From Malacoraja senta (lineage: Eukaryota), in NCBI GenBank assembly GCA_038087875.1, contig CM075978.1:103726001-103790000 (forward strand): 64,000 nucleotides of DNA. Direction: 5' to 3'. Each line of letters begins with the position of its first letter. Positions within the stretch are counted from its first letter, which is position 1. Below, piece by piece: positions 345 to 58,840 of this stretch. Under the pieces are notes generated by a model. It ran no database searches, was not told where the DNA came from, and saw nothing but the letters and a program-made list of their open reading frames with translations. A program made the position numbers and the translations under genes.

Positions 345-560
345 ATAGGCATGTGTTTGTGTATGTGGGCGTATATACATGTGTGTATGTGTATGTGTGA
401 GTGTATCCGATTGCGTATATATGTATGTACCGTATTGTATGTGTTTGCTTTGTATGGTATATATATGTTATGTGTGTGTTTTTTTATTATGTATTATGTC
501 TATGTCTGCGTTCTGTATTGTGTAGGTATGTGTTCTGCATTGTATATGTGTGTAAGTGAA
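345..560. repeat. Degenerate (TG/TA)n low-complexity tract upstream of the first coding exon
   Basis: Direct reading. Other microsatellites: (GT)n ~4220-4242, (AT)n ~5211-5232, (GT)n ~32780-32800. Confidence 0.9.
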
Positions 561-8284: not shown

Positions 8285-9640
8285 GATAGCAGAGCTGAAC
8301 ATCATTACTGAGAGTCAATGAGTTAAGCATAGAAAAAGGCCCCTTTGGCTTGACTTGTCTGTGCTGCACAAGTTGACAAACCAAGACTCCAATGTGGTTT
8401 TGATTGCTCATGTCCCTCCAAACCTTCCCTATTCACATCTGTCCAAACATCCTTTAAATGTCATGATTGTACATGCCTCTACCACTACCAGTTTTCTTCA
8501 TATACTCAAAACCTCTGTGTCAAATCTACCAGACCAATAAATCATCCTCGTAAATCAATTTTGCAGCTTTTCTAGTTTAATGACATCCTCCTATAACAGT
8601 GTCCAGAACGGTACACACTATTCCAAATCTATTATTATTATTATTATTAAATGTAGCCTTACCAATATTTTGTACCTATGTAACCTGACGTGCCAACTTC
8701 TGTACTCAAAACGCTGATCAATGAAGGCAAACATGCCAAACACCTTCTTTACTATCTGTCCAACTGTGTCATCACCTTGCCATCGTCCAGCCTTGTTTTT
8801 TTCCTAGCAAAATGCCGCACCTCACTTTTATCTGAATCCATCTGCCATTCCTCAGCCCATTAGCACAGTTGAGCAAGATCTCGTTATGATTGCAGATAAC
8901 CTTCACTGACAACTATACCAGCAATTTTAGTGTTATCTGCAAACTTACTAGTCATACTACCTTCACTATTACTCACTAATCAATAATATAAATAATGAAC
9001 AACGGTGGATCCAGCAACAATCCCTGTGGTACACCACTTGTTAGAGGTATTCAGTCTGAAAAACAACCCTCTACAACCATTCTCTGATCCCTACTTTCAA
9101 ACCAATTTTGTATCGCATCGGCCTGGTTTACATGTGATCTAACTTTGCAGACCAGCCTACTGTGCAGTTTCTTTTCAACAGCCTCACTAAAGTTCACGTG
9201 GACATTGTCTACCACTCTGTTCTCATCAACCTTTTTGGTCACCTCTTTAAAAAACAATCAAATTCTTGAGACAAGACATGCACATTGCATCAGCCCTAGC
9301 CTTTCGAAATGCTGGTAAATTCTGTTTCTCAGAGTCACCTCTAATAATTTACCCACCACGGATGTGAGACTCACTGGTCTGTAGTTCCCAAGGGTTTCCT
9401 TGTAATCTTTCCACATTACCCACTCCAGTCTTCCAGCCCCTCATTCATGTCTACCAATGATCCAAATATTTCTGCCATTTCTTCCCTAACTTCCCACAAT
9501 ATTCTAGGATACACTTGACCATTTATCTACTTGAATATATTTTATGACCTCCAGCACCTCCTTCTCTGTGACATGGATTAATTCTATTCAAGACATAACT
9601 ATTAACCTCCCTGAGTTCCCTCGCCTCAATGTCTTTATGC
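8285..9640 (-). mobile_element. Old fragmented CR1 LINE
   Basis: ORF 9051-9257 FFKEVTKKVDENRVVD..NFSEAVEK resembles CR1 RT; CR1-like tail near 8290-8360. Confidence 0.75.
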
Positions 9641-12600
9641 ATGGTAAACACAGATGAGAGCCACATCTTAATGAATAGGTCTGATATAAAAACAATCCCC
9701 ACTGTGACAAAGAGTTCAACTGGTACATTCCAGAGATTCCCTGATTTTAATGCCTTTGGACAGTATTTAAAGCTTATAGCTCTTTAAAATATATACTTTT
9801 AATGAAAATAACAGAAGGTTTTGTTTGCAAGTTGTGGAAACAGGTCAAAACAATGATATTGTTAACGGTACACCAATTATAAAATCTGGATGCAATTAAG
9901 AAAAGGATTTTCCTTTGCACAGGAACTGAAGCCTATTTAATGAACTGGTTTGTATTTTTTCACATAAAGTTCCCATTTCTCTTCAAGTGTTACTGACTCC
10001 TTGCTAGGACTATTTGCACCATTACTGCTGCTCTTTGATCAGTTAAAAAAGCTCCAGGGTCCATGGGCTACACATTGCCCTGAATCTTGTTAAGATGATT
10101 ATGAATCTCAAGAATCCCTTTCATTTCAACTTAAAATTCTTACCTGCTCGTTAGAGCCTTTTGATCTCTGTGGAGCTGGTGGTTTGTAAAAAAAAAATTC
10201 TCTCAGCTATGTTGCCTCATTGATAGATAAATCCAAACTCAGAACACTGGGATTTGTTATTATGGAAAGCCCAATTTTATTATGAACTTCATGTGTGGTC
10301 TTGGACTCAATGATAGACATCTATGTAAGGTTCGAAGGCAAGGCATTTGTGTACCCTGATCTTTAACAATGAAGATCAACAAAATATACCATCATGGGAG
10401 CCATTTGAAGTGTTAAGAATGTCAGTTCTCTGTGCAATCCTCGATCCACAAATGGAAATATTCCAGAAAGTGGCAAGGAGTCATGAGAACCATGGCTGGT
10501 CCTTCCCTTTGGAAACAAATAAACTATTATTTTTTTGTTTCTCCTTTGGAGTGTCTTGGGTAGTCATAGAGGCACAGAAAGTAATACTAGGAGTTGGATA
10601 TTTGACTCTTTAAGCCTGCTCCATCATTTAATTTGATCATGGTTGATCTTCTGTCTCAATACCATTTTCTCGTTACCTTCTCATATCTTGGAGATATGTC
10701 AAGATATACTTGGTTTCACTTCAGTTCTAGGTTGAGGCCAGTGTGGAACATGCAGACTCAGCTGTAGGTATAGCAGAAGGTGTCTGACAGAATGGATGAG
10801 TGGGCAGTAGTTGTGAGGTGGTGCACTCCTTCTGTGCTAACTATGACTTCTGTCTACTCCCAATGCCGGGACTTGAGATGCACACTGCCTGCAACCACTG
10901 CTTAGATTAACTTTGTAGAGCTGGGGTCAAGTCTGAGAGCTTTATGGCTTGTTGAATTGACATGCCCAAGGGAAGGCATAAAGTGGAAAGTATTTTGATA
11001 TCTTCGGTATTCAAGAAGGACAATTTTGCCATTTCCTGAGGGAAAATGGAACACCTTCATCTGTCTATCTCTTCATTGTGCTTTTGACGTGCCATGAAAA
11101 TCCCGCAGATGAAACAGTAATTCAAGCCTTACTTGTGCAAAAAAAACCAAGGTTGCATATTTCTATTGATGAAAGAATTGGAACCATGCAAAGCATGTTA
11201 ACTTCCATGCTATTTATATGCAGGTGTTAAAGTGATTAGTTCAGGCAGATAAACCTAAAAAAAAAAAGAGGAATGTCAAGCAAATATGCTTAGCTTACAG
11301 CTGCTGTTACTATTGGCAGTGGTTTCCAGCCATTGAATCAGACAATATCATAAATCAGGTTAATCACTAGTCTTAGAAGTTGTGGTAAATTTTAAAGAAA
11401 ACAATATGTAGCTCTCACTCACATTGAAGTCAAATTCAGGCAGGCTCTGAAAGCCAAATACTGGCTGTTTGTTACTTTTTAAAACTTTTCTCAATCAAAG
11501 TTCTCACCTGATAATCAAATATTATTTTAAAGGATAGGCATTCTATTTGGGACCAGCATAGAGCTTATAGTGTGGAGCCTAGATTGTAATTAAGTTCTTT
11601 AATCTACACGTGCATCTATTGCAGCCAAAGTTTAAAAACGATAAAATAACGCTAGTTTATAAGCGCACTTTATAAATAGGTAAATAGATTCAAAGTATTA
11701 AAAACAAATTTAAAATGAGTTGTCAGTCAGCTTCCTGCAGGAAGGAAGACTTTAGAAAAACTTGGGAACGTTCAGTCCCTCAAGCCTGTTTCAGTAGTCA
11801 GTAAGGTCATGGCTATTGTCGTTCATTACTTGTTCCATTGCACTGGCCCTGATTTTGCCATAATACTCCAGCAACCTCAGGTCAAAAAATATTTTTTGTG
11901 TGAGCAACTATTGGAGTTATGGGAAGTTCTAAACTCTGACACTTTTGAGAGAAAATGTTCAACTTGGAATAGATTTTGTATACTTTTGTTCTAGACCCTG
12001 TCTCCCCCATCTTCTATCATTCACTTTTGCAGTCAGCAAAAAAGATTGTCTCAATCTATCTTAATAATTCTTTCCAAGATACTAAACATCTCAATCTCAT
12101 TATATCAGACAATTTTATACTCTCATATTAACTTCCTGTCAATAAGTTCTATCATTGATTGCACCCTCATGCCATACCCCAGGAATGCTAGCCTGGTCTC
12201 TGTAAATGTTACATTCTGCACAGTGCAACTACCTCTCCATCTTAAGACATGATGACCAATATTGGAATCAGAGTTTTTTATGCAACTGCTTCTGAATATC
12301 CCTTAATATTCCTTGCTTCCAATTTTGAAGGCTAACATACCATTAGTATTTATGAATGTCAAGATCTTATCTTTAATTACAGTGGGGACTATTGGAACAA
12401 GGATGCAGTAATTTAAGAAACAGCTACTATTATTAGATTGGACGTGGAAGTTAATAATAACACCTATTGATAGGAAGCTAATATGGGAACATAAAATTAT
12501 ATGAGCACAATCTCATGGTTATAAATGTAGGAAGTTTACAATTATCATATTTTCCAATATCTATTTATATTGGTGGTATGGAAATTTTACTTGTTATTCA

Positions 12601-14497
12601 GATAATCTATCCATAAGGTCATAAGATGAAGCCATATAGGAATCACCTTGCTCGACACCAAGAGCTTGACTGTAACCCCGGCATGTATAAAGATGGCTTG
12701 AAAGGACTGAGGGTATAGCTTGCACTGGACACATGAATTGCTGTCTGTCGGCAGGGGTCGGAGCTCGGTATGGGAGAGGTGGTTGATGGTGGTTGTTATT
12801 ATTAGTTTACAATACTTGAATTACTTAACACACCAGGTAGAGGGAAGAAAGAGAAGGTAGTCAGTCCTACTCCTGAAATTGCACCTCAATCAGGATCCAA
12901 AAACCGATATAAGAATCCAATCCTAAATAACTTGGAATGGATTTTGGATACTTTTGTCCTAGTCCTAAATGTTCCCATCGGGGAAGAAATTGGCAACACT
13001 GCAGAAAGAGGAAGATTCCACATCTGGATCTCCAAACATGTGAGCTGTCAGTCTTCACTGGCAACGTTTTCCACACATTGCCCAATCTGAATGGGAAAGA
13101 AATGCCAAACCCATCATTTATTTCTGTGTCTGTAACAACCACCAGTGGAGCCAGTACTGCCAGTGTCTAGACTGATTTCAAGAATGATCATCCTCTGGAA
13201 AAATTATTTGCAGGCCATATCCTGCTCATGGTCGCTGATGTGAAATCTGTCATACACCAAGGGACCTGCTTCTTTTCATGACTACTTTACAGGTGGTCTC
13301 CAGCATGAACTGTGTGAGCAGAGAAAAGTAATGGAATTTAGGCAGGATTCCATCATCTTTCTTCCTAATGCATATTCCTTACAGCACTATGCTGCAGTGT
13401 TAGTTGGGGGTGGAAATGATGGAAGCATTAATCCATTCCAGATGCTACATTTTCCACTGCATTTGTGGAAAAAAACTGAAAGGTCTTCAGCATGAAATGT
13501 AGTCATTTATAAAAACAAAAGACGAGAGAAGCTTGCTTGTCCTTTGAAGCTCATCCATCCACGTTAGCTTTCCTAATATTAGCATTGGACTCTACTTTGA
13601 ACATTACCTTTTTAATTGTCTCTTGCTGTTTTAGTGTCATAGAGTCAAACAGCACACAAACAGGCATGCAGCCCAACCTGTCCAAGTTGACCAAGCTGCC
13701 CATCTAAGTTCGTGCCATTTGCCCACATTTGGAACATAGCTCTCTAAATCGTTCCTGTCCATCTACCTAAAAGGACACAGTTCTGGAGTCACTGCAGGTC
13801 AGGCAGCATCTCTGAAGAACAAGGATATGTGACATTTCAGGTTGAGACACTTCTGTCCATCTACCTTCTTCACTACCCCACCCCATCTAGTAACATGGGA
13901 ACAATATTGAAAGAGCTAGTGTGAATTAATAATGAACCCACATATACATTGCTCTAGATTTGATGTATGCAGTGCAAATAAGAACCAATATTCCTGGGGC
14001 AGTTTTATTCACTGGTGTTATAATGAAACTCCTGTTGGTCATGAAAGTAATCCCTAATCCTGCTGAAAATATTTTAAGTTGCTGCTGAATATATTTATGA
14101 CGTCTTCGGCTCCATTTCTTCTAGGTTATTCTGTTTATCTTTTCCACACGATTTACAGATCTTTCTTTCCAATGCCTTCCTTATAAGACTAGGAATCCTG
14201 TGGTTCAGTTATCTTTTCTCTTAGCTCATCTCCTTTCATCTTACTTGTAGCCTCTCTTCAATATTTCTGGATATTTTTTCACTTGTGTCATGATTGAAAC
14301 CAGTGCTCCATTGCAGGCTAACTAAATACTTCACATAACATTTACTACATTTCCTGCAGTTTTCTTCCTCACCGTCAACCTGATGGTCAGTTTTTGTATC
14401 ATCTGCAAACATTTAAATTTTTCCTTCAAAAATTATGCCTAAGTGAAATCAAAACAATAGCTTCAGAAGAGACTACCCAGGTGATGCTGAATTACTA

Positions 14498-18858: not shown

Positions 18859-20318
18859 TGAGGGTAGCTAATGTTATCCCACTTTTTAAGAAAGGCGGGA
18901 GAGAGAAAACATGGAATTATAGACCAGTTAGCCTGACATCGGTGGCGGGGAAGATGCTGGAGTCAATCCTAAAAGATGAAATAGCGGCACATTTGGATAG
19001 CAGTAACAGGATCGGTCCGATTCAGCATGGATTTACGAAGGGGAAATCATGCTTGACTAATCTTCTGGAATTTTTTGAAGATGTAACTAGGAAAATGGAC
19101 AAGGGCGAGCCAGTGGATGTAGTGTACCTGGACTTCCAGAAAGCATTTGATAAGGTCCCACATAAGCAAAATTAGGGCACATGGTATTGGGGGTAGAATA
19201 CTAACATGGATAGAAAATTGGTTGGCAGACAGGAAACAAAGTGTAGGGATTAATGTATCCCTTTCAGAATGGCAGGCAGTGACTAGTGGGGTACCGCAAG
19301 GATCGGTGCTGGAGCCGCAGCTATTTACAATATACATCAATGATTTAGATGAAGGGATTCAAAGTAACATTAGCAAATTTGCAGATGACACAAAGCTGGG
19401 TGGCAGTGTGAACTGTGAGGAGGATGCTATAAGAATGCAGGGTGACTTGGACAGATTGGGGGAGTGGGCAGATGCATTGCAGATGAATAATGTGGATAAA
19501 TGTGAGGATATCCTCTTTATTAGCAAAAACAGGAAAGCAGATTATTATCTAAATGGTGTCAAGTTGGGAAAAGGGGAAGTACAACAGGATCTGGGGGTCC
19601 TTGTTCATCAGTCAATGAAAGTAAGCATGCAGGTACAGCAGGTAGTGAAGAAAGCGAATGGCATGTTGGCCTTCATAACAAGAGATGTTGAGTATAGGAG
19701 CAAAGAGGTCCTTCTGCAGTTGTACAGGGCCATAGTGATACCACACCTGGCGTATTGTGTGCGGTTTTGGTCCCTTAATTTGAGGAAGGACATTCTTGCT
19801 ATTGATGGAGTGCAGCGTAGGTTTACAAGGTTAATTCCTGGGATGGAGGGACTGCCATATGCTGAGAGAATGGAGTGGCTGGGCTTGTATACTCTGGAAT
19901 TTAGAAGGATGAGAGGGGATCTTATTGAAACATATGATTATTAAGGGTTTGGACACTCTAGAGGCAGGAAACATGTTCCCGGTGTTGGGGGAGTCCAGAA
20001 CCAGGGGCCACAGTTTAAGAATAAGGCGGAGGCCATTTAGAACGGAGATGAGGAAACACTTTTTCACACAGAGAGTTATGAATCTGTGGAATTCTCTGCC
20101 TCAGAGGGTGGTGGAGGCCGGTTCTCTGGATACTTTCAAGAGGGAGCTGGATAGGGCTCTTAAAGATAGCGGAGTCAGGGGATATGGGGAGAAGGCAGGA
20201 ACAGGGTACTGATTGGGGATGATCAGCCATGATCAGATTGAATGGCGGTGCTGGCTCAAAGGGATGAATGGCCTACTTCTGCACCTATTGTCTATTGTCA
20301 ATTGTCTATTGTCTATTG
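18859..20318 (+). mobile_element. 5'-truncated CR1-clade (HER1-like) LINE, RT region to 3' tail, frameshifted
   Basis: NYRPVSLTS, QHGF..GKSCLTNL, YLDFQKAFDKVPH, SGVPQGSVL and KFADDTKL motifs across three frames; (CTATTGT)n tail. Confidence 0.95.
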
Positions 20319-27860: not shown

Positions 27861-28340
27861 CTGTTGCAATGTTGACTGTTGACTATTGCAATGTTGGTAT
27901 TCTGGGCTATTCTCATTCCTCTAAACTCTTCCTCTCCACATATCTGTTCAAATGTCTTCTGATGTTCATAATTGTCCTGAAGAGGAGTGATTATTGAAAG
28001 ATAAATGTAGGAAAGTTATCACTTGTGAAGTAGACCAAAACTGGGGGCCAGTTTTATGGAAAATATAAAAGAGCAGCAAATATCTTATTCGGGGGATAAT
28101 TAGAACTTTTAATCTGCTAGGAGTAAAAGGAGGGTGTATATACAGATTGAAGGCAAAGGGGAAGTTAATGTTGATAGACTGAGGTGAAAAGTATTGAGAG
28201 GGGAGTAATAAATGTTAGAGTCAACCAGGTAGGCTAAATGATCCATGCATTTTCTTATTACATACTACTCACTTACCAAGTCAATAACATTGTTCATATT
28301 ATAAAATGATTGTGGATTTCATCTCTTTTGACTCCCGCAG

Positions 28341-28943
28341 AATGTACCCTGGCTGACAACACGCAAGCTGATGTTGTCCTATTGGTCGATGGCTCCTACA
28401 GCATTGGCTTGAGCAACTTTGCCAAGGTGAGAGATTTCCTCGAAACCTTAGTCAAGACATTCAACGTTGGTCGTGACCGTATCCAGATTGGTCTGGTTCA
28501 GTACAGCCGGAATTCATTCACAGAGTTCACTCTCAATAAACACTCAACACTCCAGGAGGTGGTCCGGGCTATTCGCACTTTCCCCTACAGGGGTGGCTCC
28601 ACCAACACAGGCAAGGCCATGACCTATGTGAGAGAGAAGGTCTTCGTCCAGAATAAGGGAGCAAGGAGCAATGTGCCACGTGTGATGGTGCTGATCACGG
28701 ATGGCAAGTCTTCTGACACCTTCCAACTACCCGCCATGAAGCTGCGAGATGCCGGTGTGGAGATCTTTGCTGTGGGAGTCAAGGACGCAGTGTTCAGCGA
28801 ACTTGTGGCCATCGCCTCTCCCCCTGAAAACACCCACGTGTACCAAGTGGATGACTTTGATTCTTTCCAGCGGGTATCAACAAAGCTCACACAGACACTG
28901 TGTCTCAGGATCGAGGAGGAAACGAAAGCCATCAGAGCGCGGA
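28341..28943 (+). CDS. col12a1: Exon 10 equivalent: complete vWA2 domain with MIDAS DGSYS
   Basis: ttttgactcccgcAG / GTGAGT; 603 nt; [14 protein letters not shown] and ITDGKS motifs; flanking Cys pair. Confidence 0.97.
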
Positions 28944-29886
28944 GTGAGTGAGCCAAGGATAGGAACTTTCAACTTATGATTTACTCAGCTGTACATCCAA
29001 TTATAAACAGTAATAGGAAACTCCAAATGGGGGGTAGATATCAGGCAACAAGGCAAAATAATATATTAACTACACATTAAATCATTAAATGTCTGGCCTG
29101 CTTGAAATCCGATCAATGGATGGGGGTAATAAACAGAACTCAATCCAAGTGACCACCCACTGTCCATGGCTTTTTAAAATCACGTGCAAATTAACTTTAT
29201 TGGGAACTTGATAATGCGCCATGCAGCACTGTTTAGTAAAAATGTTGAGAGTGGGAGTGGGATTGACTACTTAGGGTTGTGGACAGGGATCAAACAAAAA
29301 AGGCTGCTTTGCCCTAGATGGTGCCGTGCTTCATGAGAGTGCTGAAATTATCCAGGTAAATATAGTGTCCTTAACACTCTTGATGTCCTTGTTGATAACC
29401 CAAACCTAAAGGAGATAGTGGGAGCTCCCATTGGCACAGCAGGGACATTTTTTAAGACAATTTTTTAAAATATTGCTCATTGCTACATCAGGATAGAGTA
29501 TCTGTCAAGTTTCTCAATCACTTTCATTTTGTATTGCCCATCAGAAATAATAATCAATTTTCAAAAACAGTGAATATGCTTCCCATATTCTAATTTTACA
29601 TAAATGATTTTTCTTTCATTAATCAAAATTGATCTTCTTTTATAAATCCCATAGATTAAATTACTTCATCCTGTTACAGTAGGAAGTGTAACAGCATCAT
29701 TGGTGCTTTATTGTTGTTGACATATTATTTTATAGGAGTTAAAGTGCATGTAGGTTGCAGATTCATGCTGTGAGCGAGTGACTGTTTTCTCATTACTGAA
29801 ACTGCATCCTGATAGGGGATTTAAATGTCTAAATTTGACTGTTTAGCTCAAAGGTCTTGTTGATAATTGATGTCCATTAATCATAG

Positions 29887-30319: not shown

Positions 30320-30795
30320 GGCCAGGCAGCATCTCTGGAGAAAATGGATAGGTGACGTTTCGGGTTGGGACCCTTCTTCAGACTGACTGTAGCCCCCGCC
30401 CCCCCCCCCCCCACCCCCAGCTGCCTTCTCTCTGTGGATCAGAGCATAACAGCAGGATCTATTCCCTAAGGTAGTTGAGTCTAGCTTTAAGTCTTGGGGT
30501 ACAAACTGCCCAAGCGAAATATGAGGTGCTGCTCCTCCAATTTCCGGTGGTCCTCACTCTGACCATGGAGGAGGCCCAGGACAGAAAGGTCGGATTCGGA
30601 ATGGGAGGGGGATTTGAAGTGCTGAGCCACCGGGAGATCAGGTAGGTTATAGCGAACCCGCTGAGTTTCTCCTACATTTTTGTCTCCCTTCGACTTTCCA
30701 GCATCTGCAGTTCCTTCTTAAACAAACTGCTGAGTTACACCACCACTTTGTGTCTATCTGCAGTATAAACCAGCATCTGCAGTTCCTTTATACAC
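30320..30795 (-). mobile_element. Penelope-like element remnant: terminal repeat, GIY-YIG endonuclease C-terminus and inverted terminal-repeat pieces
   Basis: 30499-30657 (-) translates VRYNLPDLPVAQHFKSPSHSESDLSVLGLLHGQSEDHRKLEEQHLIFRLGSLY, the PVAxHF..H..E..LI..L pattern of PLE endonucleases; hammerhead-bearing repeat at 30320-30390; inverted repeat pieces at 30658-30795. Confidence 0.85.
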
Positions 30796-49290: not shown

Positions 49291-49772
49291 GGCGTGCTTG
49301 TACATTTGAGAGTAAGATTCTGCACAGTAGCTGTGGTGCAGTATCAGTGGTGTGGGTGTTGGCTTAAAATGATGGATGGTAGTCCATTGTACGAGTTAGT
49401 GTTGGGATTCTTGAGGAGGTAGGATGGGCACTACATGATAACGGAGATTTTGAAATACTTATATTTGTTCAGGTGTAAAGGAAAGTGAGATGGGTTATTG
49501 CGTGGCAGACGTGGAACAGCCTGATAGTGTGCATTAGTTTGAGTTCAATGGAATAACACCTCTCTCCTACTGATTACAAAGTCAACATGAACTGTGTGTT
49601 GTGAGATCAGAAGACTCCAGGGAAAGGAAAACAAAGTCATTTAATAAACAGGGAATAAAACAGATGCATTTGTATTCATTGAGTAAAGTGTAAACTTGTG
49701 AAAAAATTACAATGGCAACATTTGAAACACTATTGCCTGGATGTTTGAGGCATTACACACATTATTTTAGGT

Positions 49773-49909
49773 CTTCTTCTTGCGTATGGCGTGCATAGCC
49801 TAAAGTTGTAGGGCAACTTGTTCTATTTGATCTTATTTGATTGTGCACGCCAGGTTGATTGCATTCGTTGAAACAGGGCGGACCACGTGTAGGTTGCAAT
49901 CTCCCACCC
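49773..49909 (-). mobile_element. ~137-bp non-autonomous retroposon (Ingi/Vingi- or RTE-like short element) with a ribozyme head and (AAG)n tail
   Basis: Direct repeat (C)ATTATTTTAGGT at 49760-49772 and 49909-49921; - strand ends GCCATACGCAAGAAGAAG; no tRNA A/B boxes seen. The clade assignment is inference. Confidence 0.85.
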
Positions 49910-49910
49910 A
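49857..49910 (-). ncRNA. Minimal HDV-like ribozyme motif
   Basis: (U)GGGUGG GA GAUUGCA ACC UACACGU GGU CCGCCCU GU UUCAA CGAA UGCAAUC: P1, P2 (7 bp), P3 (3 bp) and P1.1 (2 bp), L3 U..G and J4/2 CGAA, all in HDV order. G1 is missing in this copy. Confidence 0.82.
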
Positions 49911-50342
49911 TTATTTTAGGTAAAAATTCAACATAAATGCTTTTTCCTGGGTTCAGTCAGGTTAGTGATTATTTTGGATCAATTATCTACCCATTGGGAA
50001 ATCTGGCCAAAGTGCAAAAATGGGAACTATGACATTATTTGGCACAATATCGCAAAGACTGAAGCAGCAGATTAGCAAAAATAGATATAGATTTTAAAAA
50101 ACCCAATATGATACTGATGTTTCATTCACAACCTAACTCATTGCTCAGTTGTAAAGAGAGACCTCATTGTGCCTTTCCTGAATGACTGTGCTGTGAACCT
50201 CTGGGCAAGATGCTGCTGAATAGTTCGGCCTGTAGTTTCCAGAGGCACGGTGTTGTCCACGGCATGCGACTCCAGTATTGGATTGGTGGGGAACTGTCAT
50301 ATAGATGGAAGCTGCCCTCAACCCTCCTCTGTGTTTTACTTA

Positions 50343-51069: not shown

Positions 51070-51339
51070 AACATGGTTCACCTCGCGACCTCGTGACAGA
51101 CAACGTCACGCCGACTACAATCGATGCTTCATGGACACCAGCTCCAGGGAATGTACAGAGTTACCGCATCACCTGGAAGTCACATTTCGGTGATGATAAA
51201 GGAGAAAAGTTGGTCTCTGCATCCACTCCTTACACAACGTTGGATAATCTGCTGCCAGAAACCAGATATCAGATCCTTGTCCACGCTGCTTACAGCAGTG
51301 GTGAAGGAGATCCGCTTGAAGAAGAGGAGATCACTGATG
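51070..51339 (+). CDS. col12a1: FN3 exon matching human exon 14 (EHGSPRDLVTD...YSSGEGDPLEEEEITD)
   Basis: tttttctttgcccAG / GTATGT; 270 nt; aligns by eye to human ERGSPQDLVT...YSSGEGEPL. Confidence 0.94.
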
Positions 51340-51918
51340 GTATGTTAATCCTGCTAGAAGCAAGAATCTCACATTCAATGATATCAAGAGTCCTAACCAG
51401 TGCAGTGTTTGAAAAGTTGAGTCCTGTAAATTTTATATGTTTGCAATTTTTAAACTACATTTAGATAAGAACCATATGTTGAATTGAATGGAAAAAAAAC
51501 ATTCCAGTTCTTTTTATTCTTGCATCAATGACTTTGCCATTCCTCCCATTGTGCTTCTTGTGTTCTGGTCCACTGTATCTAGTGTTGTGCAGGGTGCTGA
51601 CCGCCACTTGTAATTTGCATGTGTTCAAAAGTAGTCTTAATGACTTGATGTTCACATGCGATAGCACAACCAGGTCTTGTCTACATGGATTATAACACAA
51701 ATAATTAAGGTGAGAGGGAAAAGATTTTAAAACGGGCCTGAGGGGCAACATTTTCATACAGAGGAAGGTAGAGATATGGGATGAGCTGACGGAGGAGACT
51801 GTGGACGTAGATGCATTCACAACATCTAAAAGATTCTTTGACAGATACGTGACTAGAAAGGTTTTTGGAAATATTGACCAGTAGCAGTGAAGTGGGAAGA
51901 GCTCAGTCTAGCAACTTA

Positions 51919-52960: not shown

Positions 52961-53227
52961 CTACTCCAGAGGCCAAGAGATTGCGCATAACAGATGAAAC
53001 AATTAACACTTTTCGAGTGAGCTGGATTCCGGCCCCCGGCAAGGTGTTGAACTATCGACTCACTTACAGACCTGCAGATGGAGGAAGAGCCCTAATCACC
53101 AAGGTTCCCCCTCATCTGACCAGCACTGTCCTACGACGGCTCAATCCCCAGACAACGTACGATGTCTCTGTTGTTCCGATGTATGGGAAAGGGGAAGGAA
53201 AATTAAGATTGGGGCAAGGAACAACAG
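52961..53227 (+). CDS. col12a1: FN3 exon matching human exon 15 ([14 protein letters not shown]...[12 protein letters not shown])
   Basis: tgttctgcAG / GTGTGT; 267 nt; [19 protein letters not shown]. Confidence 0.95.
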
Positions 53228-53634
53228 GTGTGTTTATGTTACTTAATGAGAATTCTGCTGAGGTTTAAATATTTTTGCAGCTAATCGAAGAGCATTGAAG
53301 TCTCTTCTGTATTTTCATTACGCTCTATTTCTGGGCAACATATTGCATAATGGTAATGCAAAATTATCAGGTCAAATAGGGTGCAGTGGTTCAATCCTTA
53401 CCTGTGTGTGTGGAGTTTGCATGTTTTCCCTCTGACCAGATGGTTTTCCTCCAGGTGCTTTGGTTTTCTCTGGCATCCTAAAGATATGCTGGTTATTGGG
53501 TTAATTGGTCACTCTGAATTACCCCTAATGTAAATGGGTGCAAGAGGAATTGTTGCAATTGGAAGTTTCTGGTCATATGATAAGGTGACATTTACAAAAA
53601 TTAAGTAGAAGAAGATTGGTGGGATTTTTATATA

Positions 53635-56654: not shown

Positions 56655-58840
56655 GTAGAATTGGCTTCATGATAGGAAGTAGACGGTGGTGGAAGGTTGT
56701 TTTTTCAGACAGGAGACCTGTGATTAGTGGTGTGCATCAGAGATTGGTGCTGAGACCATTGCTGTTTGTCATCTATATCAACAATGTTGATACTAATGTA
56801 CAAGGTGTGATTAATAAATTTACAGATGACAATAAAATAGGTGGTATTGTAGACAGTGAAGATAGTTATCAACATTTACATGGTGATCTCGATCAGCTGG
56901 GCAAGTGGGCTGAGAAATGGCTAAAGAAGTTTAATTGTGATAAATGTGAGGTGATGCCTTTTGTGACATTAGATCAGGACAGGACTTTCACTGTGAATGG
57001 TAGTGCAGAGGGATATAGGAGTATGAGTATAGAGTTCCTGAAAGTGACCTAACAGGTAGATAGGGGGATGAAGATGGCTTTTGGCACATTAGTCTTTACC
57101 ATTTAGGGAATGATAGTTGGGACATCATGCTATAGTTGTACAAGGCATTGGTGAGGCTGCACTTGGAGTACTGTGTTCAGTTTTGGTCACCCTGCTATAG
57201 GAAAGGTACCATTACGGTGGAGGATTTAGGAGGATTTTGCCAGGACTTGAGGGGCTGAGCTAAAGGCAGAGGTTGGGGATGCTAAGACTTTATTCCTCAG
57301 AGTGCAGGAGTCTGATGGGTGATCTTATAGTGGTATATAAAATTGTAAGGGGAATAGACAATAGACAGTGGACAATAGGTGCAAGAGTAGGCCATTCGGT
57401 CCTTTGAGCCAGCACCGCCATTCAATGTGATCATGGCTGATCATCCCCAATCAGTACCCCGATCCTGCCTTCTCCCCACATCCCCTGACTCCGCTATCTT
57501 TAAGAGCCCTATCTAGCTCTCTCTTCAAAGTATCCAGAGAACCGGTCTCCACCGCCCTCTGAGGCAGAGAATTTCACAGACTCACAACTCTCTGTGTTAA
57601 AAAGTCTCTGTTCTAAATGGCTTACCCCTTATTCTTAAACTGTGGCCCCTGGTTCTGGACTCTCCCAACATCGGGAACATGTTTCCTGCCTCTAGTGTGT
57701 CCAAACCCTTAATAATCTTATATGTTTCAATCCCCACTCATCCTTCTAAACTCCAGAATATAAAAGCCCAGCCGCTACATTCTCTCAGCAAATGACAGTC
57801 CCTCCATCCCGGAAATTAACCTTGTAAACCAATGCTGCACTCCCTCAATAGCAAGAATGTCCTTCCTCAAGTTTGGAGACCAAAAATGCACACAATACGC
57901 CTAGGTGTGGTCTCACTAGGGCTCTGTATAACTGCAGAAGGACCTCTTTGCTCCTATGCTCAACTCCTCTTGTTTTGAAGGCCAACATGACATTTGCTTT
58001 CTTCACTGCCTGCTGAACCTGCATGCTTACTTTCATTGACTGATGAACAAGGACACCCAGATCCCATTGTTCTTCCCCTTTTCCCAACTTGACACCATTT
58101 AGATAATAATCTGCTTTCCTGTTTTTGCTACCACAGTGGATAACCTCACATTTATCCACATTAAACTGCATCTGCCATCCATCTGCCCACTCACCCAACC
58201 TGTCCAAGTCACCCTGCATTCTCATAGCATCCTCCTCACAGTTCACACTGCCACCCAACTTTGTGTCAATAGATAGGGTGAATGCACAATCTTTTCCCAG
58301 GTAGGGGAATCAAGAACTAGAGGGCATAGGTTTAAGATGAGATGGGAAAAATTTAATAGAAACTTGAGGGGCAATTTTCTCACCCAGAGGGTGGTGAGTA
58401 TTTGGAACGAACTGCCAGATATAGTAGAAAAAAAAAGATATTATAACAACACTGAAAATATATTTGGGCAGTGTAAGATATTATGGCAGTAGCATATAGA
58501 TAACAACTAGCACAGTATTTCAGTACACGCTGTTGCCAGTGTGGGTCTTTTTTATTTTGCAAAAGTACACTGCGCATACTCATACATATTCACGACTGAT
58601 AAAATAATGAATATTTTACGTGACTCAAATCACACCATTCTGACACTCAGTTCTTGCAGTTACAGTTACCATTATATACACAATTAAAAAACACTACAGA
58701 CAGGTAAATGGATAGGAAAGGTTTTGAGGGATATGGGCCAAACATGGGTAAATTAAACTAGCTTCGATAGGGCATCGTGGTCAGCATGGATACATTGGGC
58801 TGATTGGCCTGTTTCCGTGCTGTATAACTCTATGACTGTG
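56655..58840 (+). mobile_element. Older degenerate CR1 LINE split by the 57359-58267 insertion
   Basis: SGVHQRLVL..PLLFVIYIN, KFTDDNKIGG; sequence resumes at 58268 and ends in a CR1 3'UTR. Confidence 0.85.
57359..58267 (-). mobile_element. CR1 LINE 3' fragment, same subfamily as 18859-20318, nested in an older CR1
   Basis: ORF 57845-58258 nearly identical to the 19.4-19.8 kb copy; (ACAATAG)n tail on + strand; AATAGA duplicated at both ends. Confidence 0.93.

What the first reader, a model, noticed from the sequence alone, without database searches (positions are those of the whole stretch)
49760..49921. Tiny retroposon headed by a minimal HDV-like self-cleaving ribozyme
Seen: a ~137-nt insert between 12-13 bp direct repeats (C)ATTATTTTAGGT. 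Its - strand begins GGGUGG-GA-GAUUGCA-ACC-UACACGU-GGU-CCGCCCU-GU-UUCAA-CGAA-UGCAAUC. This gives P1 GGGUGG/CCGCCC plus the U37 partner, P2 GAUUGCA/UGCAAUC, P3 ACC/GGU and P1.1 AC/GU. L3 has the U20 and G25 equivalents, J4/2 is C-G-A-A with the catalytic C75 equivalent, and P4 is reduced to 5 nt. Established: HDV-like ribozymes define the 5' ends of R2, some RTE and L1Tc/ingi retrotransposons and of short derivatives such as R2 SIDEs and trypanosomatid NARTc/SIDER; P4 is dispensable. Inference: this is a promoter-less 'ribozyme SINE' family of cartilaginous fishes that cleaves itself out of host read-through transcripts and borrows an Ingi/Vingi- or RTE-type RT. This copy lacks G1 (U1-U37 instead of the G-U wobble), so the family consensus is more likely active than this copy. 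I cannot tell from here whether the family is already catalogued.
Basis: partly seen in the sequence, partly recalled or inferred. Interest (0 to 1): 0.93.

Follow-up and report, generated by a model that had tools for sequence, protein, structure and literature searches.

The report
Ribozyme-headed mini-retroposon in a cartilaginous fish
This is one slightly damaged copy of a very abundant ~138-base mobile element of cartilaginous fishes; its first 54 bases have the fold of a stripped-down hepatitis-delta-like self-cutting RNA, which probably trims the element's RNA to its exact start, but cutting itself is still untested.

Summary
A 137-nt insert (49773-49909, element on the - strand) lies between exact 13-bp direct repeats. 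It sits antisense in an intron of a COL12A1-like gene.

- **Family:** public runs of two organisms give it a summed depth about 10^4-10^5 times that of its flanks. Contigs break away at 49772/3 and at 49909. Its 31-mers occur in at least 12 coded organisms.
- **Independent copies:** One has its own 10-bp target duplication.
- **Head:** the first 54 nt fit the HDV-like double pseudoknot (P1, P2, P3, P1.1; U20, C22, G25; J4/2 CGAA) with no P4. A fold starting at nt 1 arose in 3 of 400,000 shuffles.
- **Tail:** the last ~60 nt plus (AAG)n also end a tRNA-SINE-like element in L004.

I read it as a bipartite non-autonomous LINE derivative with a minimal ribozyme head. This copy lacks G1 and is probably inactive.

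Not shown: cleavage, covariation (only four copies), and the partner LINE. Rfam models do not match.

The scan's first readers noted the same kind of element many times elsewhere in this genome; no follow-up was listed for any of them. I found no paper describing it. P4-less HDV-like ribozymes are so far reported from phages.

The parts
49760..49772 (.). Left copy of the target-site duplication, CATTATTTTAGGT. It lies 3' of the element, which is on the - strand.
   Evidence: Exact 13-bp direct repeat. Family contigs diverge at 49772/49773 (table 7).
49909..49921 (.). Right copy of the target-site duplication. It lies 5' of the element. C49909 is shared with the element's first retained G.
   Evidence: Loose ends pile up at 49909: 150, 200, 42 and 7 contigs in the four runs.
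49773..49909 (-). The retroposon copy, 136-137 nt. It lacks the family's first G and differs from the family majority at 49796, 49813 and 49869.
   Evidence: Summed word depth is 1-4 x 10^5 over the insert against about 5 on the flanks in X1 and X9. Majority letters come, table 3. It aligns to L004 copies at 91%, 87% and 76% identity.
49857..49909 (-). Head: a minimal (P4-less) HDV/CPEB3-like ribozyme fold, family positions 2-54.
   Evidence: Descriptor match. Coordinates mapped. Shuffle test.
49904..49909 (-). P1 5' strand, GGGUGG (family positions 2-7). Position 1 would fall at 49910, which reads U on this strand instead of G.
   Evidence: L004 copies a and b start GGGGTGG.
49895..49901 (-). 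P2 5' strand, GAUUGCA.
   Evidence: Seven Watson-Crick pairs with 49857-49863. Intact in the window copy and in L004 a and b.
49892..49894 (-). P3 5' strand, ACC.
   Evidence: Pairs with GGU at 49882-49884. Invariant in all four copies.
49885..49891 (-). L3, UACACGU, carrying U20, A21, C22 and G25. A21 and C22 form P1.1 with GU at 49873-49874.
   Evidence: L004 copy b has UUCACGU and copy a has UUCGCGUU with one inserted base. UUCACGU is the mouse Cpeb3 ribozyme L3 at positions 20-26, as read from a primer that starts 18 nt from the cleavage site (PMC10919898).
49882..49884 (-). P3 3' strand, GGU.
49875..49881 (-). P1 3' strand, CCGCCCU (family positions 30-36).
   Evidence: The only family variant of at least 5% here is G32>A, which turns U5.G32 into U5-A32. 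It holds 13% of depth in X1 and is seen in L004 copy b.
49873..49874 (-). P1.1 3' strand, GU.
   Evidence: C22-G37 is invariant in all four copies.
49868..49872 (-). A 5-nt linker, UUCAA, in place of P4. The family majority is UUCGA.
   Evidence: 49869 T>C holds 84% of the depth.
49864..49867 (-). J4/2, CGAA. C at 49867 is the equivalent of the catalytic C75 of HDV and C57 of CPEB3.
   Evidence: No variant of at least 5% at 49867, although it lies in a CpG. The neighbouring G varies. CPEB3's J4/2 is 4 nt with the catalytic C57; C57, G58, A59 and A60 are named there (PMC4836649).
49857..49863 (-). P2 3' strand, UGCAAUC.
49782..49856 (-). Structured 3' module. An 8-bp closing stem encloses three hairpins. 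The last ~60 nt are the shared LINE-type tail.
   Evidence: MFE -20 kcal/mol, z = -3.5. Positions 76-135 are 90% identical to the tail of a tRNA-SINE-like element in L004. There is one compensatory G-C>A-U change in the closing stem.
49773..49781 (-). (AAG)3 simple-repeat tail.
   Evidence: In other copies the letters next to 49773 read ...TTCTTCT, so the tail length varies (table 7).

Best explanation
The insert is a dead copy of a very abundant, ~138-nt non-autonomous retroposon of cartilaginous fishes. It is built like a 'bipartite non-autonomous LINE', that is, a LINE 5' end joined directly to a LINE 3' end.

Its first 54 nt form a minimal HDV-like ribozyme with a CPEB3-like core, without P4. 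Its last ~60 nt plus an (AAG)n tail form the 3' module that a LINE reverse transcriptase recognises.

Proposed mechanism:
1. A source copy is transcribed as part of a longer RNA.
2. The head folds and cleaves immediately 5' of G1, which gives every RNA the same 5' end.
3. The partner LINE protein binds the 3' hairpin and tail and primes reverse transcription on a nicked AT-rich target.
4. The cDNA runs to G1 and is integrated with a 9-13-bp target duplication.

What is shown: the target duplications, the very large family with sharp ends at G1 and at the variable (AAG)n tail, AT-rich flanks, a tail shared with a different (tRNA-SINE-like) element, and the HDV-like fold placed exactly at nucleotide 1.

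What is inferred: catalysis, read-through transcription, and the identity of the reverse transcriptase.

This particular copy lost G1 at the 5' junction and carries three substitutions against the family majority. It lies antisense in an intron of a COL12A1-like gene. It is most likely inert.
For: - **Insert and TSD:** a 13-bp target duplication flanks the insert.
- **Family size and ends:** summed depth is 1-4 x 10^5 over the insert against about 5 on the flanks in two organisms. Loose ends pile up at 49772/3 and at 49909. The flanking letters are AT-rich and have no consensus.
- **Spread:** the insert's 31-mers are held by runs of at least 12 coded organisms, with shares up to 0.91.
- **Independent copies:** L004 holds copy a (starts GGGGTGG, with its own 10-bp duplication AATGGCTTTG), copy b and a decayed copy c.
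- **Fold:** the descriptor finds P1 of 7 bp, P2 of 7 bp, P3 of 3 bp, P1.1 of 2 bp, U20, C22, G25 and J4/2 CGAA.
- **Chance:** such a fold at nt 1 arose in 3 of 400,000 shuffles, or 0 with the strict rules. There were no other descriptor hits in about 255 kb of real DNA.
- **Tolerated variants:** the family variants of at least 5% in the head fall at tolerant places. One is in the linker, one is the second base of J4/2, and one turns a wobble pair into a Watson-Crick pair. The catalytic C and the L3 CpG show none.
- **Pairing in copies:** all P1 (positions 2-7), P2 and P3 pairs are intact in the three non-decayed copies.
- **Tail:** it is shared with a tRNA-SINE-like element. The 3' module folds with z = -3.5.
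- **Precedent:** HDV-like ribozymes at LINE 5' ends and bipartite non-autonomous derivatives of RTE, Ingi, Vingi and R2 are described (PMC5786205). P4-less 'minimal' HDV-like ribozymes are active in vitro (bioRxiv 10.1101/2023.06.13.544163).
Against: - No Rfam HDV, CPEB3 or drz model matches, even at E up to 10 on the head alone. Those models include P4 and cannot encode the pseudoknots.
- There is no double-sided covariation in the head among four copies.
- No RNA-end evidence exists. Only assembled contigs were available, and RNA-run contigs run through the predicted cleavage site (table 8). This is uninformative rather than negative.
- The nested MFE of the whole element is unremarkable, z = -0.8.
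- No autonomous LINE with this head or tail was found.
- No copy was found in 126 kb from six named species: Hypanus, Leucoraja, Mobula, Stegostoma, Chiloscyllium and Pristis. The taxonomic range is therefore unknown.
Confidence: 0.7

Rival explanations
1. It is a genuine retroposon family, but the head is not catalytic. On this reading the head is a piece of the partner LINE's 5' UTR kept for another reason, such as protein binding, promoter activity or RNA stability. The HDV-like drawing would then be a resemblance or a dead relic, and the sharp 5' end would come from a transcription start.
For: No cleavage data exist. Rfam models are silent. There is no covariation. P4 is absent, and the linker could pair in other ways. 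For example, GU-UUCG-AC in the majority form would sequester P1.1 and the catalytic C; this is my own reading of the sequence.
Against: All a-priori conserved HDV/CPEB3 core features are present in the right order and spacing and begin at nucleotide 1. The catalytic C sits in a CpG yet shows no variant of at least 5%, while its G neighbour does. P4-less HDV-like ribozymes are active.
Confidence: 0.17
2. It is a conventional SINE transcribed by RNA polymerase III from an internal promoter in a head derived from some small RNA.
For: Its size of about 140 nt, its high copy number and its LINE-type tail are SINE-like. It has no internal run of four T.
Against: No small-RNA family of Rfam matches either strand at E up to 10. 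No A or B box is visible in the head. By contrast, the tRNA-SINE-like element with the same tail in L004 shows TGGCGCAG and GGGTTCAATCC.
Confidence: 0.06
3. The 'family' is only the heavily 5'-truncated 3' end of a LINE, and the TSD-flanked 137 nt are a dead-on-arrival fragment.
For: Most LINE insertions are 5'-truncated. The tail is LINE-like.
Against: Truncation points would be scattered. Here hundreds of contigs in each of two organisms diverge at the same nucleotide, 49909, and depth falls from about 10^5 to about 10^2 within one bin. Independent copies a and b start at the same G.
Confidence: 0.04
4. The HDV-like motif is pure chance in an unrelated repeat.
For: Loose descriptors hit shuffled sequence 0.5-0.8 times per 64 kb.
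Against: The fold falls at nt 1 in 3 of 400,000 shuffles, or 0 with the strict rules. It is preserved in independent copies from another organism. L3 and J4/2 match CPEB3.
Confidence: 0.03

Closest known systems
Bipartite ORF-less non-autonomous LINEs of the RTE, Ingi/Vingi and R2 clades. Examples are MAR4_MD, RTESINE2 and WALLSI3, R2 SIDEs, and NARTc/SIDER of trypanosomatids.
   Same: A LINE 5' end is fused directly to a LINE 3' end with no ORF. Mobilisation is in trans. In R2 SIDEs and NARTc the retained 5' end is an HDV-like ribozyme that sets the RNA 5' end (PMC5786205; PMC3414825 and PMC3185411, abstracts).
   Different: It is much shorter, about 138 nt. The host is a cartilaginous fish. 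Depth-based abundance is very high. The ribozyme has no P4. Unlike R2, it has no rDNA target specificity. Unlike Pr77, no internal promoter is known. The parent LINE is not identified, so clade membership is open.
Minimal (P4-less) HDV-like ribozymes: drz-Mtgn-1 and the theta ribozymes of gut Caudoviricetes.
   Same: A nested double pseudoknot in which P4 is replaced by a few nucleotides. The catalytic C lies in J4/2 and cleavage is 5' of G1. These ribozymes are shown active and C-to-U sensitive in vitro.
   Different: Those come from phage and metagenome sequence and process the 3' trailers of tRNAs. Their authors report finding minimal forms only in phage genomes. This one heads a vertebrate retroposon and is untested.
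Mammalian CPEB3 intronic ribozyme (Rfam RF00622).
   Same: U20, C22, A23 and G25 sit at the same numbering and J4/2 is 4 nt. In L004 copy b, L3 is UUCACGU, identical to mouse Cpeb3 positions 20-26. P1.1 is then one G-C plus one U-U, as described for CPEB3.
   Different: CPEB3 has a full P4. It is single-copy, mammal-specific, and sits in one conserved intron. The Rfam model does not match here. Any common descent is speculation.
HDV-like ribozymes at the 5' ends of autonomous RTE, R2, LOA and L1Tc LINEs (Ruminski et al. 2011; Eickbush and Eickbush 2010; Sanchez-Luque et al. 2011).
   Same: The proposed role is the same: co-transcriptional release of the element RNA from an upstream transcript.
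   Different: Those are full-size ribozymes on protein-coding elements. In some of them the ribozyme also promotes translation, which is irrelevant here.

Membership tests
HDV-like (delta) self-cleaving ribozymes | Nested double pseudoknot in the order P1-J1/2-P2-P3-L3-P3'-P1'-P1.1-(P4)-J4/2-P2' | tested here: met
   A descriptor written for this topology matches at 49910-49857 on the - strand and at L004 copies a and b.
HDV-like (delta) self-cleaving ribozymes | Catalytic cytosine as the first base of J4/2, directly before the P2 3' strand | tested here: met
   C at 49867 in CGAA. It is kept in all four copies and has no family variant of at least 5%.
HDV-like (delta) self-cleaving ribozymes | G1 forming a G.U wobble at the cleavage site | tested here: not met
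   This copy has U at position 1 (49910), opposite U36. The feature is met in L004 copies a and b (GGGGTGG). It is implied for most copies by the C that follows 49909 in the loose ends of all four runs.
HDV-like (delta) self-cleaving ribozymes | L3 with U20 and G25 (metal-binding reverse wobble) and C22 pairing into P1.1 | tested here: met
   L3 is UACACGU with P1.1 A21-U38 and C22-G37. The roles of these residues are taken from PMC4836649.
HDV-like (delta) self-cleaving ribozymes | P4 helix | tested here: not met
   A 5-nt linker (UUCAA, majority UUCGA) takes its place. P4 is absent in the accepted 'minimal' subgroup.
HDV-like (delta) self-cleaving ribozymes | Match to curated covariance models (Rfam HDV_ribozyme, CPEB3, drz families) | tested here: not met
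   No match at gathering score in the window. No match at E up to 10 on 701, 66 or 71 nt. The models include P4 and omit the pseudoknots.
HDV-like (delta) self-cleaving ribozymes | Covariation supporting the helices | tested here: inconclusive
   With four copies there is one one-sided change (U.G to U-A) and no two-sided change in the head. All unpaired cells apart from the G1 and P1.1 positions come from the decayed copy c.
HDV-like (delta) self-cleaving ribozymes | Site-specific, divalent-ion-dependent self-scission that a C-to-U change abolishes | not testable with these tools
   This needs an in vitro transcription and cleavage assay.
Non-LTR retroposon copy (TPRT insertion) | Target-site duplication flanking an element with a simple-repeat or A-rich 3' tail | tested here: met
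   The 13-bp duplication here. A 10-bp duplication at L004 copy a. The (AAG)n tail varies in length.
Non-LTR retroposon copy (TPRT insertion) | Many dispersed copies with common termini | tested here: met
   Depth and loose-end pile-ups. Copies in L004 lie in unrelated flanks.
Bipartite non-autonomous LINE | The 3' end is shared with an autonomous LINE | not tested
   No matching LINE was available. The tail is shared with a tRNA-SINE-like element, which argues for a LINE-derived tail. The CR1-like LINEs seen here end differently.
Bipartite non-autonomous LINE | The 5' end is shared with the same autonomous LINE | not tested
   No eukaryotic genome search tool was available. The 22-25-mers of the head are absent from the metagenome, prokaryote-genome and viral collections.
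SINE in the strict sense | Head derived from tRNA, 7SL, 5S or snRNA with an internal Pol III promoter | tested here: not met
   No Rfam small-RNA match. No A or B box is visible in the sequence.
CPEB3 ribozyme (RF00622) | Match to the family model, with its P4 and its conserved location in a CPEB3 intron | tested here: not met
   No Rfam hit. There is no P4. The host locus is COL12A1-like. Only the core (L3, J4/2) is alike.

The most novel reading that the evidence does not exclude
This is the first eukaryotic example of a P4-less 'minimal' HDV-like ribozyme, and it is active. On this reading it serves as the only 5' functional module of a promoter-less retroposon with roughly 10^4-10^5 copies, spread over many cartilaginous fishes. 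Because its core is nearly identical to that of the mammalian CPEB3 ribozyme (L3 UUCACGU, P1.1, J4/2 CGAA), it could represent the kind of vertebrate retroposon ribozyme from which the CPEB3 ribozyme was domesticated.
Probability: 0.4. Interest if true: 0.75.

Novelty: new variant of a known kind. Interest (0 to 1): 0.62.

Why it matters
**What is already established.** HDV-like ribozymes that define the 5' ends of LINEs, and short non-autonomous derivatives that keep them, are known.

**What would be new.**
1. A vertebrate family of this kind at very high abundance, shared by many cartilaginous fishes.
2. A natural eukaryotic ribozyme of the minimal, P4-less type, so far reported only from phages.
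3. A core almost identical to the CPEB3 ribozyme, whose evolutionary origin is unknown.

**Why that is useful.** A 54-nt natural HDV-like ribozyme with very many naturally mutated copies would be a ready-made mutational data set for this fold. It would also make the idea that a ribozyme can replace a promoter in SINE-like elements directly testable.

**Practical consequence.** Annotators of shark and ray genomes should expect this element in introns, in both orientations. Sense-oriented active copies could cut host pre-mRNAs.

Tried and rejected
- **Rfam, four searches**. Nothing was found for HDV-like families or for any small RNA.
- **Other copies in the window.** BLAST of the insert against the window found only itself.
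- **Exact 22-25-mers of the head** in the metagenome (two scans), prokaryote-genome and viral collections gave 0 hits.
- **Protein trick.** The element's sense frame is open for 45 codons. The search for homologous proteins found nothing. The exhaustive representative search found one ORF, P0212, which led to L004 and three further copies. Its 90% cluster has no other member.
- **Eleven more loci fetched through CR1-like RT hits.** Six were from named species (Hypanus, Leucoraja, Mobula, Stegostoma, Chiloscyllium, Pristis) and five were ENA contigs. They total about 190 kb and hold no copy and no other HDV-like descriptor hit, except that L012 was checked by BLAST only.
- **The LINE next to copies a and c in L004.** I considered it as the partner and rejected it. 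It is 79% identical to the window's CR1-like fragment and ends in a CR1-type tail well upstream of copy c. Copy a has its own target duplication.
- **The 17-nt near-repeat as the true duplication.** If true, P1's 5' strand would be target DNA. I rejected this because the family boundary is at 49909.
- **Statistics.** The motif alone is not significant. Only the test tied to position is.
- **tRNA head.** ARAGORN does not call the tRNA-like head of the L004 SINE.
- **Cleavage evidence from RNA runs.** This was not possible. Only assembled contigs were served, and their ends at repeat borders are assembler artefacts.
- **Earlier scan notes.** I asked for an autonomous ribozyme-headed LINE and found none.
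Full report
**1. Observation**

The + strand carries CATTATTTTAGGT at 49760-49772 and again at 49909-49921. Between the two lies a 136-137-nt insert. C49909 can be counted either with the repeat or with the insert.

It ends ...CGC AAGAAGAAG.

The window holds no second copy. One search also reports a 17-nt near-repeat that reaches 4 nt into the insert. The family data below place the element boundary at 49909, so these extra matches are chance or junction microhomology.

**2. It is a member of a very large family with sharp ends**

The insert's 31-mers are held by public runs of at least a dozen coded organisms, with shares up to 0.91. The flanks are held essentially by organism A only.

I laid Logan contigs of four runs on 49690-49990. 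Results:
- Summed word depth is 1-4 x 10^5 across 49773-49909 in organisms A and E, against about 5 on the flanks.
- Depth collapses within one 11-nt bin at either end.
- The tool warns that this figure is not a copy number. I take it only as 'very many copies'.
- Contigs break away from the reference at 49772/49773 (245 contigs in X1, 322 in X9).
- Contigs break away at 49909 (150 in X1, 200 in X9, 42 in X18, 7 in X21).
- The sequence beyond is AT-rich and has no consensus (agreement 0.37-0.48).
- On the 3' side of the element the loose letters end ...TTCTTCT, so the (AAG)n tail varies in length.
- On the 5' side the loose letters begin with C in all four runs, so most copies carry one more G than this one.

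The family majority differs from this copy at three places: 49796 (99% of depth), 49813 (90%) and 49869 (84%).

**3. Independent copies**

The element's sense frame happens to be open. An exhaustive protein search with its 45 codons returned one ORF. That ORF lies on a 12.6-kb ENA contig, L004. L004 holds:
- Copy a: 91% identical, starts GGGGTGGGAG, and is flanked by its own 10-bp duplication AATGGCTTTG with a 2-nt filler at the 5' junction.
- Copy b: 87% identical, also starts GGGGTGG.
- Copy c: 76% identical, with a decayed head.
- Element d (L004 123-335): a different element with a head carrying TGGCGCAG and GGGTTCAATCC, which read as tRNA-type A and B boxes. ARAGORN does not call it. Its last ~60 nt plus (AAG)n are 90% identical to the tail of our element.

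So the tail is a module shared between two kinds of non-autonomous elements, as expected for a LINE-derived recognition tail.

All three majority letters inferred are also seen in L004 copies.

**4. The head**

With the family's G1 restored, the numbering runs as follows:

| Part | Positions | Note |
|---|---|---|
| P1 | 1-7 with 30-36 | G1.U36, three G-C, U5.G32, two G-C |
| J1/2 | 8-9 | |
| P2 | 10-16 with 48-54 | seven Watson-Crick pairs |
| P3 | 17-19 with 27-29 | |
| L3 | 20-26 | U20 A21 C22 A23 C24 G25 U26 |
| P1.1 | C22-G37, A21-U38 | |
| Linker | 39-43 | replaces P4 |
| J4/2 | 44-47 | C44 G45 A46 A47 |

This is the HDV-like order, with the metal-site residues U20 and G25, C22, and the catalytic C at their canonical places. 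The roles of these residues in HDV and CPEB3 are taken from PMC4836649.

In L004 copy b, L3 is UUCACGU. Copy a has UUCGCGUU, with one inserted base. UUCACGU is the sequence of mouse Cpeb3 ribozyme positions 20-26, read from a published primer that starts 18 nt from the cleavage site (PMC10919898). It gives the same P1.1 of one G-C plus one U-U that is described for CPEB3.

**5. Chance**

The motif by itself is not rare. A loose descriptor hits dinucleotide shuffles of the window 0.78 times, or 0.1 times with P2 of at least 7 bp. A P4-permitting version hits 0.5 times.

What is rare is the position. Among 400,000 shuffles of a 60-nt head of the same composition, 3 had a loose HDV-like fold starting at nt 1. 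None did when U20, C22, G25 and CGAA were also required.

In the window plus L001-L011 (about 255 kb, both strands), the only descriptor hits are this copy and L004 copies a and b, each starting at position 1.

**6. Variation**

With only four copies there is no two-sided covariation in the head. P1 (positions 2-7), P2 and P3 are fully paired in the three non-decayed copies. Apart from the G1 and P1.1 positions, every broken pair belongs to copy c.

The contig data list three head positions with variants of at least 5%:
- A/G at position 42, in the linker.
- G45 to U or A, the second base of J4/2.
- G32 to A, which converts U5.G32 into U5-A32 and is also seen in copy b.

The partner changes at the same CpGs are below 5%: C44, the catalytic C, to U, and C31 to U. 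So are both bases of the L3 CpG. By contrast, the CpG at 49848/49849 in the 3' module varies on both sides.

This asymmetry fits constraint on the source copies. It rests on depth-weighted contigs, which drop rare variants, so I treat it as suggestive only.

**7. The 3' module**

Positions 55-128 fold into an 8-bp closing stem around three hairpins (-20 kcal/mol, z = -3.5). The majority G at position 115 adds a pair. One G-C to A-U exchange occurs in the closing stem of copy c.

The tRNA-SINE-like element shares only the distal hairpin, the following ~25 nt and the tail.

**8. Context**

- The window comes from a cartilaginous fish. The best named hits of its CR1-like RT fragment (19147-19944) are Hypanus sabinus, Leucoraja erinacea, Mobula hypostoma, Callorhinchus milii and Pristis pectinata.
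- A VWA exon (28310-28951, +) and two FN3 exons (51093-51464 and 52981-53268, +) identify a COL12A1-like gene.
- The element is therefore intronic and antisense to its host gene.

**9. What it is**

It is a TPRT-inserted, non-autonomous retroposon. It is built like the bipartite ORF-less derivatives known for the RTE, Ingi/Vingi and R2 clades. For those, a link to 5' self-cleaving ribozymes has already been pointed out (PMC5786205).

The head is best read as a minimal HDV-like ribozyme. P4-less forms are accepted and active in vitro, but their discoverers found them only in phage genomes.

I found no paper that describes such an element in cartilaginous fishes. I could not query Repbase or Dfam.

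**10. What is not shown**

- Cleavage, and transcription by read-through.
- The partner LINE. The only LINEs I could inspect are CR1-like with a different tail.
- The taxonomic range. No copy appeared in 21-kb samples of six named species, which is uninformative at a density of about one copy per 64 kb.
- Any match to Rfam models.

This copy lacks G1 and has three private differences, so it is probably inert.

**11. Earlier notes of this scan**

First readers flagged the same kind of ~140-nt 'ribozyme-headed' element many times elsewhere in this genome. No follow-up was listed for any of the notes shown. I used them only as leads. The family evidence in this report is my own.

Noticed in passing
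window 28310-28951 (+), 51093-51464 (+), 52981-53268 (+): One VWA exon and two fibronectin-III exons of a COL12A1-like gene on the + strand. A Logan ORF is 98% identical to the VWA exon. The retroposon therefore sits antisense in an intron.
   Followed up: partly
window 19147-19944 (+); weaker at 56669-57052 (+): A CR1-like reverse-transcriptase fragment. It is about 80% identical to copies in Hypanus and to ENA contigs, and 79% identical to the LINE in L004. A second, weak RVT_1 fragment lies further on.
   Followed up: partly
L004 123-335 (+): A tRNA-SINE-like element with TGGCGCAG and GGGTTCAATCC boxes. Its last ~60 nt and (AAG)n tail are the same as those of the ribozyme-headed element. 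The two kinds of head apparently share one LINE partner. ARAGORN does not call the head.
   Followed up: partly
L004 8950-11511 (-) and 8095-8400 (-): A CR1-like LINE ORF of 853 aa (partial endonuclease plus RT) that ends in ...CCTATTTTTCTATG, and a second CR1 3' fragment just downstream. Neither shares the retroposon's tail.
   Followed up: yes
window 359-440 (+): A (TG/TA)-rich low-complexity stretch gives ten overlapping false hits to a loose HDV-like descriptor. This is a warning for descriptor-only ribozyme calls.
   Followed up: yes
window 30345-30390: Another first-reader note claims a minimal hammerhead core in a Penelope terminal repeat here. I did not examine it.
   Followed up: no
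L005 10616-11050 (-) with 8466-10272 (-): A LINE with a GDSL-esterase/OSK-like ORF1 upstream of endonuclease and RT ORFs, next to an LTR-type RT-RNaseH ORF (11465-13816). This is ordinary TE content of the ENA contig.
   Followed up: no
window (position not looked up): The window contains 200 N, an assembly gap or masked stretch. I left it untouched.
   Followed up: no
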